Below are positions 16,604-60,300 of a DNA stretch of 64,000 nt, in pieces. Location of the stretch: NCBI GenBank assembly GCA_951804945.1, contig OX638159.1:24614001-24678000 (forward strand). The letters run 5' to 3'. The first letter of the stretch is position 1; every line of letters starts with the position of its first letter. This stretch comes from Podarcis cretensis. Lineage: Eukaryota. The translations under genes and the position numbers were made by a program. The notes beneath the pieces are model-generated. The model did no database searches. It saw nothing but the letters and a program-made list of their open reading frames with translations, and was not told the DNA's origin.

Positions 16604-16759
16604 NNNNNNNNNNNNNNNNNNNNNNNNNNNNNNNNNNNNNNNNNNNNNNNNNNNNNNNNNNNNNNNNNNNNNNNNNNNNNNNNNNNNNNNNNNNNNNNNN
16701 NNNNNNNNNNNNNNNNNNNNNNNNNNNNNNNNNNNNNNNNNNNNNNNNNNNNNNNNNNN
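16604..16759. other. Assembly gap (156 N)
   Basis: Run of N flanked by A-rich sequence on both sides. Confidence 1.
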
Positions 16760-17523: not shown

Positions 17524-17742
17524 ACTGTGTGTTAAACAATTGGCCACTGCAACACTACAGTTGAAGGTCCAGTCCCTGTATTTTAGTAGCTCTGCTAAAT
17601 AACCTGAAAACTTACATTGCATCAGTTTGTTTGCACACATTATTTCTCTACTGCATGCAATGCTTATAACTGTGTATCCTTACCAGTGTGGTCCTTGCCA
17701 GTTTGAATGAATGATGCTGGCAATATTACAATAAACTTAATA

Positions 17743-17952
17743 AAACCAAATAAAAGAAAAAAATTCCTTCCAGTAGCACCTTAAAGACCAACTAAGTTAG
17801 TTCTAGGTATGAGCTTTCGTGTGCATGCACACTTCTTCAGATGAAAGCTCATACCTAGAACTAACTTAGTTGGTCTTTAAGGTGCTACTGGAATGAATTT
17901 TTTTCTTTTATTTTGTTTTGACTATGGCAGACCAACACGGCTACCTATCTGT
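17743..17952. mobile_element. Penelope-like retroelement remnant forming a long inverted repeat
   Basis: Arms at 17743-17818 and 17843-17918 are about 76-bp reverse complements with about 2 mismatches. Same family as 55538-55687. TSD aataaact(t/a)aata at 17730-17742 and 17953-17965. Confidence 0.85.
17807..17842 (-). ncRNA. Hammerhead ribozyme core with truncated stem I (probably inactive)
   Basis: Minus strand reads AU-CUGAAGA-A-GUGUGCAUGCACAC-GAAAGCUC-AUAC. Only 2 bp of stem I remain because the inversion junction removed the rest. Confidence 0.6.
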
Positions 17953-18279
17953 AATAAACTAAATACAAAGTCTACCCAAGGCATTTTGTTGGGACAAGAT
18001 GTAACCCCCCAGCAAATACACATATAGCATCTGAGCAGACTGGCAGCTGAATCTTACTTCAATAATGGCAACAGGATGTCATCCTTCGCTGCATCTGAAA
18101 ACTGCAAGCTACCTTTGGAGGTGCAGGACATGCTAGCTTAGGGAGAACGGGGGATTGTTGCTAATATCATTGAATGGATGTCTACACCATCTTTAGTTGA
18201 GCTGAAGGCATATGAGAGCAACAGGGATAAGAATATGCCAAAGAGAGTTGGGACAAGAAAAACCACTTTTCATACTGGA

Positions 18280-54521: not shown

Positions 54522-55265
54522 TTACTACTACTACTAATTTATTCAAACCTTTCCCATCTGGCTGGGTTGCCCAAGCCATTCTTGGTGGTTTCCAGCAGAA
54601 TAAAACATCAAATATAAAAACCTTCCTGATACAGGACTGCCTTCAGATGTCTTCTAAAAGTTATGTAGTTATTTATCTCCTTGACATCTGATAGGAGGGT
54701 GTTCCACAGGGTGGCCACCACTACTGATAAGGCCCTCTGCCTGGCTGCCTGTAAGTTCACTTCTCACAGTGAGGGAACTGTCAGAAAGCCTTTGGAGCTG
54801 GACCTCAGTGTCTGGGCCGAATGATAGGGCTGGAGACACTCCTTCAGATATACAGGACTGAGGCCATTTAGGGCTTTAAAGGTCAGCACCAACATTTTGA
54901 ATTGTGCTCGGAAACGTACTAGGAGCCAGTGTAGATCATTTAGGACTGGTGTTATATGGTCCCGGTGGCTGCTCCCAGTCACCAGCCCAACTGTCACATT
55001 CTGGTTTAGTTGTAGTTTCCATGTCACCTTCAAAGGTAGCCCCACGTAGAGCGCATTGCAGTGGTCCAAGCAGGAAATAACCAGAGCATTCTGGCAAGAC
55101 AGTGTGCAAGCAGGTAGGGTGTCAGCCAGCACACCAGATGGAGCCGGTTGACAGCTGCCCTGGAAACACAATTGACCTCCATGGACATCTGTGAATCCAA
55201 AATGACTCTCAGGCTGCACACCTGGTCCTTCAAGGGCACAGTTACCCCATGGACCATCTCTAACC
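54522..55265 (-). mobile_element. L2-clade LINE 3' fragment
   Basis: ISCLDHCNALYVGLPLKVTWKLQLNQN...RDHITPVLNDLHWLLVRFRAQFKMLVLTFKALNGLSPVYL matches the L2 ORF2 C-terminus. Confidence 0.88.
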
Positions 55266-55537
55266 TTTGCAATGAATGTATGTTTGATTCATGTTCCAAG
55301 AGTGTTTTGCTGTAAAGATGCACTCCTGTGAGTAGAGAGTAGTAGGTAGAGAGGACTCAGTGGGACTAAATTGCCGCGTCTGGGCTGTGTGTGAAAGTTA
55401 CTCTCTCAGGTGATTGGCAAGCTTTCGTATGCAGTGCATACAACTCCCACCTGCAGTACGCAGCTAAGAGTTGGGCGAGAAATATATTGGCCCTACCTGG
55501 CACTAAGCTCCTGCACTTCTATTACAATGACAGTAAA

Positions 55538-55687
55538 GTTACAGATAGGTAGCCATGTTGGTCTGCCATAGTCAAAACAAAAAAAAGTGTATCTGAAGAA
55601 GTGTGCATGCACACGAAAGCTCATACCAAGAACTAACTTAGTTGGTCTTTAAGGTGCTACTGGAAGGAATTTTTTTATTTTGTTTTG
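55538..55687. mobile_element. Penelope-like retroelement terminal remnant with inverted segment
   Basis: Starts with gttacagataggtagccatgttggtctgccatagtc (reverse complement of the 3' tail seen in the 17.9-kb copy), followed by the forward hammerhead-containing segment. 14-bp TSD acaatgacagtaaa at 55524-55537 and 55688-55701. Confidence 0.85.
55589..55626 (+). ncRNA. Minimal type I hammerhead ribozyme motif (Penelope-associated)
   Basis: Reads GUAU [stem I] - CUGAAGA [core, 55593-55599] - extra A - GUGUGCAUGCACAC [palindromic stem II] - GAAA - GC - UC [predicted cleavage after C55622] - AUAC [stem I partner]. All conserved core nucleotides are present. Helix III is reduced to the palindrome AGCU. 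Confidence 0.8.
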
Positions 55688-56914
55688 ACAATGACAGTAA
55701 AAACAGCCTCACTACTGCTGCAGCTAATACTGCTTACCACTGCTGATAATAAAAGTGCATCAGTGAAAGTGCCTTGTACTACCTTTCTCATCTGGCTCTC
55801 ATTCCAAACTGTCAGGTGAGTGCTGATAATTCATAGTCTAGAATTCTTTTATCTGAGCAGCGGTATCTCTTCTATGCACTTTGGCAGTGGAGTTACATTG
55901 CTTTTCAAAAATATTTCAAAGGTATACTTTGCTTTCTTGGATCTTGACTAAACGTTGCCAGCAGCAAAGAGAAAGCAAAGATGAATGAGTGTTTGTAGGA
56001 AATAAATGTATGTGCCTGTAATGAGATTTGGTTGTGGTACAGAAATGATATCTCCCATTTGGTGTTTGTGCTGTATGAAAGTATGTATAGCATTTCTGTT
56101 CTTTTTTCATTAATAAAGAGAGAGATGAAACGGAGTTTCTCTCACAGTCTCCCTCCCCCCCCCCATATAGAATATATTGATCTGGAGGCAATTGTAGAGC
56201 AAAGGACACAGACAGAACTGTTAGGAGTCTTTCTCCGTGTTTGCAGTCATGGGATTGTTGTCTATCACATGGCGGTGTATGTTTTCATTCCACAGTGTGG
56301 GAAGTGATGGAGACAGGATGTTTATGTTACTGTGTTCTGTGAAGTGGGACTATTGTCCTTTGTTCTTTCTCTCTTTGCTGTCTGATGAGAAAGAGGAAGG
56401 AGCTTAGTCAGAATGCTCCAAGTGTATTATATGTAAATAAAGTAGATTAGCCAAAATGCTGTGCTACTGAGTTCTGTTACACAAACTGTGAATACTCTGT
56501 GGATCCCTAAGTGTGCTGATGCCTCTTGGTATCATGCCAGTCAGGCATGTGTCTCTGCCAGGATCCTACAGGAGAGTAGGACAATCCTAACAAGAACTGG
56601 TTGTGGCCCTTCAGTTAAAGGGCACTGAGTGCAAAGTTATGGCTTGAAATATTTCTTGAGCTATTTCCCATGCTTTTGACAAAGGAAATACTCCAAGGGT
56701 AGTATTCAACACTGCACTATTACAAAGGTTCCATCTATGCAGACATAACAGGATGCCTGATGGAACAATTCTCCCCTCCCTTGTGTGCTGTCCTGGGGGT
56801 TCTCATGGAACACAAAAATGGAGCCAATACAGGGGATGGGAAAGCCCCATTGCACAGGTGGAAGTCCTTGTGAAGGGCTTTTTCTGAGAGAGTGAATCCT
56901 GATCAAGATGTTAA

Positions 56915-57385
<471 letters not shown>

Positions 57386-60300
57386 TGAGTATATACTTGT
57401 AGATCTTGGGATCCCTAGATAAAATCACCAGGAGTATGGGAATAAAAATGAGATATAAAATATGTCTGCCTTTCCCCACATGAAACCGCATATCCAGCTG
57501 CATTCATGTGAAATAAAGCAACGCCATTGAGGTTATTCAAGAGAACTTCTCTTACTCCTACATACACACTGGTTCACAGGCATTTAAATAACAATATCAT
57601 TATTGCAATGTTTTTCATTTATGAGGTTCGCATTCAGGTTCAAAGAGGTGTCCCCAAACACTTGTTGATTCAATAGAATAGTAGCTACACTCATTTTGAT
57701 GGATTGATGTAGAGTGAACTCTATGCTTGTAACAGTGAAGAAATGTCAGTATGACTCCCCTTTGATGGTTCTTTACTTCATATTATTCTCTGTGAATGGA
57801 GCAGGAGATGCTGCTAAAAGTGCAGAGTACATTTGTAAACTTAAGTATTAATGTTCTTGTGAACGCAACCTCATTATGTTCATTTGAACTGCTTCTCAGT
57901 TTGGAGACGTGCAAAGTGTCATTGCAGAAAGTGTATAGTAACAGACTATCCACTCCAGATATGCAAAATTCTTTCATTTTTTCAAAGAAGCTGTGGCAAT
58001 GTCCTTGGCAACACAAAAATGGTTATCAGTGAAGAAATGTTCCAAATGCTATATCTGCAAATACTGCAGTCCAGCATTATTGAATATAGTAATGTCTAAG
58101 GATAAATGGCAGTCTTCACCAAGTCAAGGAGACTTTTTACTCAGAACAGCTGTTTCTTTGAGCATGTGGGGGGATGCAAAATGCATTGGGAGCAGGTTTT
58201 CAAGAAAATAGTTATGAAGGAATTCACACACCTGCATCCTTTAAACAAGCACACACTCCCTCACTATCAAGGCACTTTCCCCCACCCCAAGGAGATTTGA
58301 AGCCTGCTATGGCCTTTAGGTGATGCAGTGGGAGAAACAAATCCCAGAAAAAACATCAGCCTTTTAGCTGCATACGAAAGTAATGAAATGAGCTCTCCTT
58401 TAGCAAAGAGCTCCTTTCCTTTACCTTACACATCTAGAGTCCAATACTTTACAATTAGTTTCAGCATTGCAGTAGCCATTTTTTTCCAGGTGTTATTTCC
58501 TCAGTGAAACCACTATCTCGCTAAACTGGTAGCATCTATTCTTTTACTTTATGCCTTCAGTCTCATGTTTCTTAAAAATAAATAGGGAAATTCATTCTTC
58601 CTGAAATACATGAATGCTTCTTCTACTTAAGCAACCAGGCATCGCAGGAAAACGTACCTCTTTTTGTACTTTTGTGTGCTCGCCTCTCAATCTTACACTC
58701 TCTCCACGTGCCAAAGCGTAATGAAAATAAATTGGAACAGTAACAGTTGAATTGTTTCACTGCTTACTTTCGGAGATGTGTCATGTGAAAACATGTCAGA
58801 ACTAAACTCTGGTTCATATCCTGTTAGTAAATACGAAAGGAATCCCAGTCAAGTGGAGATGGTTGTGAAATGAATTAATTTACATCATATGGTACCGATC
58901 TCACTTATGCAAACATCCCCCTTGACTTTGGAGAGTTTGTGTCTCTAAAGGGATGCAGAACTATATCTCACTGCAGTGAGCAATAGGTTAGGTATTATTG
59001 TGAACTTTGCTGCTTGAAAGTTCTGACAAACAATTAAACTAGCCAAGGAAATTTAAAGTCAGGTATAACTGGGTGTGTGCAGCAACCAAAAGGCTCCTCT
59101 TGTATATGTAGCATCTGGAAGCAGCCTCATCTGTTTTAAGATCTGCTCTGTATTATTCTGATTTGATTCATTATTTGGGTCCAATTCTGATCTGTTAAAT
59201 TCAAAGCTCAGTTCTACATCTATTGACCATAATTAGAAATCTAAAGATGGATATAAGGTTTTACTCCCCTGCCTTTTCACTCAAGTGTTTGAAATTTGCA
59301 GGGAAATTTCTTGAGCAGGTTCAGTCTGCCAAATCCTTTAAGGGGTTTTAAAAATATTACTTGATGCTCCATCTCTGGGTGCAGATTTCTCTCTACCCTC
59401 ACAGAGGAAAATGTGTTCTGTCCTATGGGCTCTGGGACTCCCTCCCAAAAACCACAGGATTGCAGGGTGCATGTACAAACTGTTTAGTCAAAACCATTAT
59501 TTGATTTTTAATTTTTAATTTTTGTATTCTGTTTTCCAACAACAAAAGTTGAGCTAACAGTAGCTCGCACTAATAACAATTGCATCAAAAATTAGCAGAC
59601 ATTCCAATCTCTGTATGAATATTATAAACAAAGTAGCATGTAAAGTATGCAAAAAACGAAGCCATTCATTTAAACAATTAATGCAATTCAGTAAAAACTC
59701 AACTGCTTCAAAATATCAGGAATAGCTGTTGAGCACCAGCCCTGTCCCAGTTGACGTCCTCTCTCTGGGAAAGGGTTTCTTTACCCGGTGTGGCAGCAGT
59801 GCACTCCCAGGCAGCAGCAAGACCTTTCATAGGGAAGTAGGATAAAAAAAAATCTCATTGTGGTTTTGCTACGTACTAACTTGCTTATTAGAAAATACAG
59901 AATCCGTTGAACTATATAAGCAGCACTTCACTGCCGTTTGAATTAATAGTAAAAATGCACCCTAGCGCTTGTAACACCTTTTTTCCTAATTTGTGGTTAA
60001 ATTCAATATTTTTCTTTTTAAAAAAGTCACTGTGTTTTCTATAACATTCATTTAGCAGACTCATTTAACTGTCAATGGTTCCCATTAACGTAATTGTTTC
60101 ATAGTACTTTGAAATATCAAGAGTTTTATGCTCTTCATCTAAGCTGCAGTTACTTTTTTTAATGAAAGGTGAAATAGCACAAAATTAGGAATGCAATGAT
60201 ATATTTTTAGCAGCAGCATTTTGGCATTCCAATTGATGAGATTAAATTTTTAGCCATATCTCAGAGTCTTAAAGTCTTAAAAAAAGTTTTCCCTGCACCG

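What the first reader, a model, noticed from the sequence alone, without database searches (positions are those of the whole stretch)
55589..55626. Intact minimal hammerhead ribozyme on the sense strand of EFNA5 intron 1, 1.37 kb upstream of exon 2
Seen: GUAU-CUGAAGA-A-GUGUGCAUGCACAC-GAAA-GC-UC/AUAC. This gives the full hammerhead core, a 4-bp stem I, a palindromic stem II and a helix III reduced to AGCU, with predicted cleavage after C55622. It lies inside a Penelope remnant with a perfect 14-bp TSD, so the insertion is probably recent. Established: Penelope-like elements carry minimal type I hammerheads that are thought to cleave as dimers through the palindromic helix III; an extra nucleotide between A9 and G10.1 is tolerated in natural hammerheads; and intronic hammerheads exist in amniotes (e.g. 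RECK). Inference: every EFNA5 pre-mRNA from this allele would carry a potential self-cleavage site just before the acceptor of its key exon, which could affect co-transcriptional splicing or ephrin-A5 dosage. A lone monomer may well be weak or inactive.
Basis: partly seen in the sequence, partly recalled or inferred. Interest (0 to 1): 0.78.

Follow-up and report, generated by a model that had tools for sequence, protein, structure and literature searches.

The report
Penelope-type repeat copy with hammerhead motif
A short, recently inserted copy of a common lizard jumping-gene family sits in an ephrin-A5 intron and carries that family's usual minimal hammerhead ribozyme motif, which on its own is most likely inactive, so this is an ordinary example of a known kind.

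Summary
Window 55589-55626 (+) reads as a complete minimal type I hammerhead: 4-bp helix I, CUGAAGA, one extra A, palindromic helix II, GAAA, helix III reduced to AGCU, and C17 at 55622. My descriptor scan finds it once in the window and in 0 of 200 shuffles.

It lies in a 150-bp insertion with a perfect 14-bp target duplication. That insertion has the Penelope-like anatomy: a short inverted copy, a 33-nt tail at one end only, and a 5'-truncated direct copy. A second copy with an identical 30-nt core lies at about 17.8 kb on the other strand.

The motif lies 1,367 nt upstream of an exon that matches ephrin-A5.

The functional inference is not supported:
- Helix III cannot form in a monomer, and an AGCU duplex between two molecules is worth only -2.5 kcal/mol.
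- No second sense-strand copy lies in the window.
- Single Penelope mini-hammerheads did not cleave in vitro (PMC4209133).
- The anole Poseidon hammerhead, which has the same layout, cleaved only with its own protein, and no RNA-seq ends were seen at its cut site (PMC11167929).

No Rfam hammerhead model matches. This scan already holds 104 notes on hammerhead/Penelope repeats elsewhere in this genome.

The parts
55524..55537 (.). Left copy of the target-site duplication, ACAATGACAGTAAA
   Evidence: 14 of 14 identical to 55688-55701.
55538..55570 (-). 33-nt 'tail'. This is element sequence that continues past the normal 3' end and is present only at this end, in inverted orientation.
   Evidence: the reverse complement of the left end shares TTTTGTTTTGAC with the right end and then runs on for about 33 nt. 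The same extension is seen in the 17.8-kb copy. Tails of 30-40 bp at one end are described for Penelope-like elements (PMC8557442 and PMC11167929, passages and main text).
55571..55587 (-). Short inverted, 5'-truncated copy of the element's 3' end (GTCAAAACAAAAAAAAG on the + strand)
   Evidence: (inverted repeat I1).
55588..55687 (+). Direct, 5'-truncated copy of the repeat. It starts a few bases upstream of the hammerhead core and ends at GTTTTG. The next two bases, AC, could belong to the element or to the duplicated target.
   Evidence: 95 nt at 96.8% identity to the 17.8-kb copy.
55589..55626 (+). Minimal type I hammerhead motif. Helix I 55589-92 with 55623-26; CUGAAGA 55593-99; extra A 55600; helix II 55601-14; GAA 55615-17; AGCU (helix III half-site) 55618-21; C17 at 55622; predicted scissile bond 55622/55623.
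55688..55701 (.). Right copy of the target-site duplication
17742..17955 (-). Second, longer copy of the same repeat, on the strand antisense to EFNA5. It has the tail, a long inverted copy and a direct copy, which together form an 82-nt-arm hairpin. The 30-nt hammerhead core is identical, but there is no helix I next to C3, and GAAAGCUC is paired with the inverted arm.
   Evidence: (MFE -126.7 kcal/mol, z -19.8).
56989..57281 (+). Ephrin-A5 exon (293 nt), with an AG acceptor before it and GTGAGT after it. It is context only and not part of the element.
   Evidence: sequence; 97 of 97 residues aligned to ephrin-A5 chain 1shw_A, E 1.7e-66.

Best explanation
This is one small, young, dead-on-arrival insertion of a high-copy Penelope-like (or Penelope-mobilised, protein-less) lizard repeat.

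Inferred mechanism of insertion: both strands of the nicked target were extended by reverse transcription that began inside the element's RNA. One cDNA is about 100 nt long and forms the direct copy. It stops 4-5 nt upstream of the hammerhead core. The other is about 50 nt long and forms the inverted copy. It began at the more distal start site and therefore carries the 33-nt tail. Joining and repair then duplicated 14 bp of target.

The hammerhead motif is family baggage. In the source element it belongs to the pLTR region, where two copies in tandem transcripts, probably helped by the element's own protein, can build the shared helix III and cleave.

In this intron the motif is a lone monomer whose helix III is only the half-site AGCU. 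It is most likely catalytically silent, and the insertion most likely has no effect on EFNA5.

Shown here: the sequence, motif, target duplication, tail, inverted anatomy and second copy. Inferred: the insertion mechanism, the inactivity and the lack of effect on the host gene.
For: - Motif and chance control.
- Perfect 14-bp target duplication flush with the homology limits.
- Inverted short copy plus one-sided 33-nt tail, the same in both copies. The second copy is a fold-back with 82-nt arms.
- The target duplications differ in length (14 bp here; about 8-12 bp, imperfect, at 17.8 kb). That fits reverse-transcription-based insertion and not a cut-and-paste transposon.
- Literature on element anatomy: Penelope-like elements show 5' truncation, an adjacent inverted truncated copy, a 30-40-bp tail at one end and a hammerhead in the pLTR (PMC8557442, passages). 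The green anole Poseidon element nicks and extends both strands and starts reverse transcription at two internal sites, which explains the tail (PMC11167929, main text read).
- Literature on the motif: Penelope mini-hammerheads have helix I of 4-5 bp, a long helix II, an unpaired nucleotide between 9 and 10.1, G10.1-C11.1 and palindromic 15.2-16.2 (PMC4209133, body text read up to the start of Methods).
- For inactivity, from calls: an AGCU:AGCU duplex is -2.5 kcal/mol. The homodimer minimum-energy fold of the 38-mer is an extended duplex through the helix II palindrome, not a double hammerhead. Helix I pairing probability falls from about 0.7 in a 66-nt context to about 0.05 in 131-nt and 281-nt contexts (all). 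There is no second sense copy in the 64 kb.
- For inactivity, from papers: single motifs gave no detectable cleavage, and dimers gave low cleavage (PMC4209133). The anole hammerhead did not cleave without its protein, and no RNA-seq reads began or ended at its cut site (PMC11167929).
Against:
- The assignment to Penelope-like elements rests on insertion anatomy and the motif. No reverse transcriptase or GIY-YIG open reading frame was linked to this family, and no repeat library was available.
- Only two copies were available, so neither the family consensus upstream of the core (is helix I GUAU a family feature?) nor covariation could be tested.
- The helix I plus helix II fold is within 0-1.2 kcal/mol of the minimum-energy fold, so the motif is not sterically excluded from forming.
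- The family is abundant in this genome according to this scan's own unchecked notes. Partner RNAs or the element's protein could therefore be present in some cells.
Confidence: 0.8

Rival explanations
1. The motif self-cleaves in EFNA5 pre-mRNA, as a monomer or through trans-dimers, often enough to change co-transcriptional splicing of the next exon or ephrin-A5 dosage.
For: - All conserved core positions are present on the sense strand, 1,367 nt upstream of the acceptor.
- The helix I plus helix II fold is near the minimum-energy fold.
- Conserved intronic hammerheads exist in amniote genes (PMC6155905, passages).
Against: - Helix III is a 4-nt half-site and cannot close in a monomer. The trans duplex is only -2.5 kcal/mol.
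- There is no sense partner in the window.
- Published single mini-hammerheads are inactive (PMC4209133).
- The anole hammerhead with the same layout needs its protein and shows no in vivo ends (PMC11167929).
- The insertion is young (perfect target duplication; copies 96-97% identical). It therefore has no record of conservation, unlike the RECK-type motifs.
- No Rfam hammerhead family is matched, including the conserved intronic ones.
Confidence: 0.04
2. Conditional, protein-assisted cleavage. Where the autonomous Penelope-like element is expressed, its protein, or abundant family transcripts acting as partners, could fold or dimerise intronic copies such as this one. The pre-mRNA would then be cut occasionally, with little or no phenotypic effect.
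For: - The anole Poseidon hammerhead is a protein-assisted ribozyme, and its protein is predicted to be a dimer (PMC11167929, main text).
- The family appears to be abundant in this genome (unchecked notes).
- Thirteen small runs of organism A (X2-X12, X14, plus X1 at 0.15) hold 0.07-0.15 of the words of the 1.6-kb stretch. The repeat makes up 0.094 of that stretch, so these runs may hold the repeat alone. This was not checkable.
Against: - In the anole element the RNA needed for protein action reaches 172 nt into the ORF, beyond the reverse-transcription start sites (PMC11167929). This copy ends at the first start site, so it probably lacks part of that region.
- The same paper found no reads ending at the cut site in vivo.
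- The 17.8-kb copy in the same intron supplies a 95-nt antisense match that could sequester the motif instead.
Confidence: 0.12
3. This is not a Penelope-type retroelement. It is a fold-back DNA transposon (MITE) or SINE that happens to contain a hammerhead-like string by chance.
For: - The longer copy is a near-perfect hairpin.
- No reverse transcriptase was linked to the family here.
- Rfam gives no hammerhead hit.
Against: - The duplicated targets differ in length.
- The inverted arms are not terminal: a 33-nt unpaired tail lies outside them at one end only.
- There is no poly(A) or A-rich 3' end typical of SINEs.
- The motif meets five independent features of the published Penelope mini-hammerhead that go beyond the core boxes (PMC4209133).
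- 0 of 200 shuffles give such a motif.
Confidence: 0.03

Closest known systems
Minimal hammerheads (min-HHR) of metazoan Penelope-like elements (Cervera and de la Pena 2014, PMC4209133)
   Same: Type I layout, short helix I (4 bp), long G-C-closed helix II, one unpaired nucleotide between A9 and G10.1, and helix III reduced to a palindrome (AGCU). They mostly occur as scattered single motifs in truncated copies and are reported in reptiles (turtle and snakes).
   Different: This particular sequence family (helix II GUGUGCAUGCACAC) was not seen in the text I could read. The supplementary alignments were closed. Helix II here is 5 bp with a 4-nt loop in the predicted fold, against the 7-8 bp quoted for Schistosoma.
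Hammerhead of Poseidon_Ac (PAc), the green anole Penelope-like element (Frangieh et al. 2024, PMC11167929)
   Same: By eye, from the template sequence printed in the paper, the order of parts is the same: short helix I, CUGANGA, extra nucleotide(s), helix II, GAAA, 2-nt palindrome, U, C. The cut site lies some tens of nucleotides upstream of the internal reverse-transcription start sites (about 85-92 nt there; 63-65 nt and 96-98 nt here). The insertion products have a tail and both strands extended.
   Different: The sequence differs. In PAc the ORF starts at helix II. Here the ATG inside helix II meets a stop after 9 codons, so this family is non-coding or a different element. The comparison was made by eye only; the paper's sequence was not put into any tool.
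Non-LTR retrozymes of animals (Cervera and de la Pena 2020, PMC7229834, abstract only; Li et al. 2026 preprint 10.64898/2026.07.22.740005, abstract and part 1 of 2 of Results read)
   Same: Short, protein-less repeats with type I hammerheads, related to Penelope pLTRs and present in reptiles. Monomer derivatives are scattered through genomes, including introns.
   Different: Retrozymes are defined by tandem head-to-tail units that give circular RNAs. This is a single unit with an inverted partner and no tandem repeat.
Conserved intronic hammerheads of amniotes (RECK, CTCL, DTNB; PMC6155905, passages)
   Same: A type I hammerhead motif on the sense strand of an intron in a vertebrate gene.
   Different: Those motifs have a full helix III, loop-loop tertiary contacts and deep conservation, and they have Rfam models. 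This one has none of these, matches no Rfam family, and is a young repeat insertion.

Membership tests
Hammerhead ribozyme, minimal type I variant of Penelope-like elements | Conserved core: C3 U4 G5 A6 N7 G8 A9, G12 A13 A14, A15.1-U16.1, H17 | tested here: met
   CUGAAGA 55593-99, GAA 55615-17, A55618 and U55621, C55622.
Hammerhead ribozyme, minimal type I variant of Penelope-like elements | Open-ended helix I of about 4-5 bp flanking the core and the cleavage site | tested here: met
   GUAU with AUAC, 4 bp. Pair probability is about 0.65-0.75 in a 66-nt context but about 0.05 in 131-nt and 281-nt contexts.
Hammerhead ribozyme, minimal type I variant of Penelope-like elements | Helix II closed by G10.1-C11.1, longer than the canonical 4 bp, preceded by one unpaired nucleotide after A9 | tested here: met
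   Extra A at 55600; GUGUG-CAUG-CACAC is 5 bp with G-C closure; pair probability 0.83-0.91.
Hammerhead ribozyme, minimal type I variant of Penelope-like elements | Palindromic 15.2-16.2 (helix III half-site) that lets two copies build a shared helix III | tested here: met
   AGCU 55618-21 is self-complementary. The duplex energy is only -2.5 kcal/mol.
Hammerhead ribozyme, minimal type I variant of Penelope-like elements | A second motif on the same strand nearby (tandem) to form the active dimer | tested here: not met
   The only other copy in the 64 kb is on the opposite strand, 37.8 kb away, and lacks helix I. Sequence beyond the window was not examined.
Hammerhead ribozyme, minimal type I variant of Penelope-like elements | Self-cleavage at H17 | not testable with these tools
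Rfam hammerhead families (type I, II, III, HH9, HH10; names recalled) | Score at or above the gathering threshold of the covariance model | tested here: not met
   The whole window gave 0 matches at gathering thresholds. Region 55500-55720 at E up to 10 gave 3 matches, none of them a hammerhead family. This is expected if the models require a helix III.
Penelope-like element insertion | Target-site duplication of variable length | tested here: met
   14 bp, perfect, here. About 8-12 bp, imperfect, at the 17.8-kb copy.
Penelope-like element insertion | 5'-truncated copy with an adjacent inverted 5'-truncated copy | tested here: met
Penelope-like element insertion | 30-40-bp tail present at one end only | tested here: met
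   About 33 nt at the left end of both copies and absent from the right ends.
Penelope-like element insertion | Link to an ORF with a telomerase-like reverse transcriptase and a GIY-YIG endonuclease | not tested
   Neither copy holds an ORF. The window's ORFs were not scanned, and no repeat library or genome of this species was available.
Animal non-LTR retrozyme | Head-to-tail tandem units, each with a type I hammerhead | tested here: not met
   There is a single direct unit and no tandem copy.

The most novel reading that the evidence does not exclude
Lone Penelope mini-hammerheads in sense introns might not be inert. In cells that express the autonomous element's dimeric protein, intronic copies such as this one would be folded or paired and cut. 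Bursts of Penelope activity would then cleave hundreds of host pre-mRNAs, EFNA5 among them, at defined sites. That would be a cost, or a regulatory layer, visible as selection against sense-strand intronic copies.
Probability: 0.05. Interest if true: 0.7.

Novelty: new member of a known kind. Interest (0 to 1): 0.15.

Why it matters
This single locus matters little. It is one more copy of a repeat family whose hammerhead motif, dimer model and insertion anatomy are already in print.

It is a clean, young example in which each part of a Penelope-type insertion event can be read to the base: tail, short inverted copy, truncated direct copy and 14-bp duplication.

Neither copy starts at the predicted cleavage site. 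In this window the cDNAs run 8 to 36 nt beyond it. This agrees with the published in vitro result that uncleaved RNA is the substrate for insertion.

The general question is whether lone intronic mini-hammerheads are ever cut in vivo. It stays open and would be worth a genome-wide test, but this locus gives no special handle on it.

Tried and rejected
- **Rfam.** At gathering thresholds the whole window gave nothing. At E up to 10 on 55500-55720 there were three chance-level hits (a CRISPR repeat, TCV_H4, U4) and no hammerhead.
- **More family copies, for a consensus and covariation test.** Exact-pattern scans of viral contigs, metagenome contigs and genome contigs gave 0 hits each. These collections hold no lizard genome, so the blanks say nothing. 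Local blastn and nhmmer of both copies against the window found only the two copies.
- **RNA evidence.** Read starts at 55623, intron versus exon coverage, and presence or absence of the insertion in organisms C and D all remain unknown.
- **Folding energy as evidence.** The 38-mer (z -0.44) and the 150-nt insert (z -0.51) fold no better than shuffles. The case for the motif rests on pattern and family, not on stability.
- **An 'AC-rich stem-loop' at the reverse-transcription start, as in the anole element.** The tail in sense orientation gives only a weak hairpin (-4.5 and -4.1 kcal/mol, z +0.67 and +0.47). I make no claim from it.
- **Scan notes.** The search of earlier findings by sequence and by the words 'hammerhead reads RNA cleavage ends' returned nothing.
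- **Papers not seen.** Lunse, Weinberg and Breaker (dimer cleavage of small Penelope hammerheads) is not held. I saw only its title in the reference list of PMC6765202 and that review's summary. They may already show this exact family, so 'new member' could really be 'already known'.
- **Considered and rejected.** A MITE or SINE (see rivals). A coding role for the ATG in helix II, which meets a stop after 9 codons here and 7 in the other copy.
- **Spliced model.** Only the one exon was searched, on its own.

Full report
**What is there.** In hammerhead numbering:
- helix I is 55589-55592 paired with 55623-55626;
- C3 to A9 is 55593-55599;
- an extra A lies at 55600;
- helix II is 55601-55614;
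- G12-A14 is 55615-55617;
- A15.1, G, C, U16.1 is 55618-55621;
- C17 is 55622.

I wrote a descriptor requiring helix I of at least 4 bp, CUGANGA, 0-1 extra nucleotide, a G-C-closed helix II hairpin, GAAA, a palindromic inner helix III of 0-6 nt, then U and H. It finds exactly this site on the two strands of the 64 kb and nothing in 200 dinucleotide-preserving shuffles. The looser core pattern ending in GAAAGCTC has two matches against 0.04 expected. So the motif is real and not a chance string.

**What carries it.** The motif lies in a 150-bp insert (55538-55687) flanked by a perfect 14-bp direct repeat, ACAATGACAGTAAA. A second copy of the same repeat lies at about 17742-17955 on the minus strand. 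Its 30-nt core is identical, and the shared parts are 96-97% identical. A local blastn and nhmmer search found no further copies in the window.

Aligning the ends shows the anatomy:
- The left end of each copy, read in reverse complement, shares TTTTGTTTTGAC with the right end. It then continues for about 33 nt that the right end lacks.
- In the 55.5-kb copy the inverted part is short: the tail plus about 17 nt. The direct part starts only 4-5 nt upstream of the hammerhead core.
- In the 17.8-kb copy the inverted part is long. The whole element folds into a hairpin with 82-nt arms, MFE -126.7 kcal/mol, z -19.8.

The published signature of Penelope-like element insertions has four parts: a duplicated target of variable length, a 5'-truncated copy next to an inverted truncated copy, a 30-40-bp tail at one end only, and a hammerhead motif (PMC8557442, passages). 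The work on the green anole Poseidon element explains this signature. Its protein nicks and extends both DNA strands and starts reverse transcription at two neighbouring internal sites of the RNA, and the tail is the stretch between them (PMC11167929, main text).

**Gene context.** The exon at 56989-57281 has an AG before it and GTGAGT after it. Its translation aligns over 97 of 97 residues with ephrin-A5 chains in the PDB, E 1.7e-66, against 1.9e-44 for ephrin-A2. The motif is on the same strand, and C55622 is 1,367 nt upstream of the exon start. Calling this 'exon 2' and 'intron 1' rests on my recall of the human gene. A short recalled exon-1 motif was not found in 1-56900.

**Is it a hammerhead of a known kind?** It meets the features that Cervera and de la Pena list for Penelope mini-hammerheads beyond the core boxes. 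[quoted passage not shown] They report such motifs mostly as scattered single copies in truncated elements, and in reptiles (turtle and snakes).

The template sequence printed for the anole Poseidon element shows, by eye, the same order of parts, with a 2-nt palindrome between GAAA and UC. I did not put that sequence into any tool.

No Rfam family is matched, either at gathering thresholds over the window or at E up to 10 over 55500-55720. I take this to reflect the missing helix III and not the absence of a motif. It does mean that membership in the curated Rfam families is not met.

**Does it work here?** Probably not.
- The monomer cannot close helix III, because A15.1 and U16.1 would enclose only two bases.
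- An AGCU:AGCU duplex between two molecules is worth -2.5 kcal/mol. With neighbouring bases it is -3.9 kcal/mol.
- The minimum-energy homodimer of the 38-mer is an extended duplex through the helix II palindrome, not a double hammerhead.
- The helix I plus helix II fold is within 0-1.2 kcal/mol of the minimum. However, helix I pairs have a probability of only about 0.05 once 131 nt or 281 nt of context are included.
- There is no second sense-strand motif in the window.
- The other copy is antisense. In the EFNA5 transcript it offers a 95-nt complement to this one.
- In print, single mini-hammerheads gave no detectable cleavage, and dimers or trimers gave low cleavage (PMC4209133). The anole hammerhead cleaved only with its own protein, its core mutants did not affect insertion, and no RNA-seq reads began or ended at its cut site (PMC11167929). 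The review PMC6765202 summarises the dimer model.

One detail from this window agrees with the published finding that uncleaved RNA is the template. None of the three longer cDNA copies starts at the cleavage site. They reach 36, 32 and 8 nt upstream of it.

**What could not be done.** The one read-laying run covered 54800-57400, with two raw RNA runs and two DNA-like holders. I therefore have no data on read ends at 55622/55623, on intron expression, or on presence or absence of the insertion in other samples. Scans of the three public DNA collections for more copies were blank, as expected for collections without lizard genomes. No family consensus or covariation test was possible.

**Earlier notes of this scan.** A word search returned 104 notes on hammerhead and Penelope in this same genome. 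Several have been followed up as ordinary Penelope-type inverted insertions. One of them is a 216-bp hairpin insertion much like the 17.8-kb copy here. These are unchecked leads.

**Verdict.** The identification as a Penelope-type minimal hammerhead is supported. The proposed effect on EFNA5 is unsupported and unlikely. This is a new member of a known kind and of low interest.

Noticed in passing
window 17742-17955 (-): A longer copy of the same repeat forms a near-perfect hairpin with 82-nt arms (95% complementary, MFE -126.7 kcal/mol, z -19.8). It has an imperfect target duplication, AATAAACT(T/A)AAT. Its hammerhead core is identical, but its 3' half is paired with the inverted arm and no helix I adjoins C3.
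   Followed up: yes
window 55420-55445 (-): On the minus strand, 100 nt from the insertion, there is a hairpin GTATGCACTGCATAC followed by GAAAGCTT. It is preceded by CTGCAGG, which has two mismatches to CUGANGA. This could be an old decayed mini-hammerhead of another Penelope family, or chance.
   Followed up: partly
window 55688-55697 versus the tail, 55561-55570 in reverse complement: The first 10 nt of the duplicated target (ACAATGACAG) match 8 of 10 with the start of the tail in sense orientation (ACTATGGCAG). This could be chance or microhomology at the reverse-transcription start. The 17.8-kb copy shows no such resemblance.
   Followed up: partly
window 16604-16759: A run of 156 N lies about 1 kb from the 17.8-kb hairpin copy.
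   Followed up: no
window 54800-56400 (runs X2-X14): Thirteen small runs guessed to be RNA, twelve of organism A and one of organism B, hold 0.07-0.10 of the sampled words. The 150-bp repeat makes up 0.094 of the stretch, so these runs may hold only the repeat, which would hint that the family is transcribed.
   Followed up: no
window 55607-55636 and 17826-17803 (-): The ATG inside helix II opens only 9 codons here and 7 in the other copy. In the anole Poseidon element the ORF starts at helix II (PMC11167929). So this family is non-coding or belongs to a different element.
   Followed up: partly
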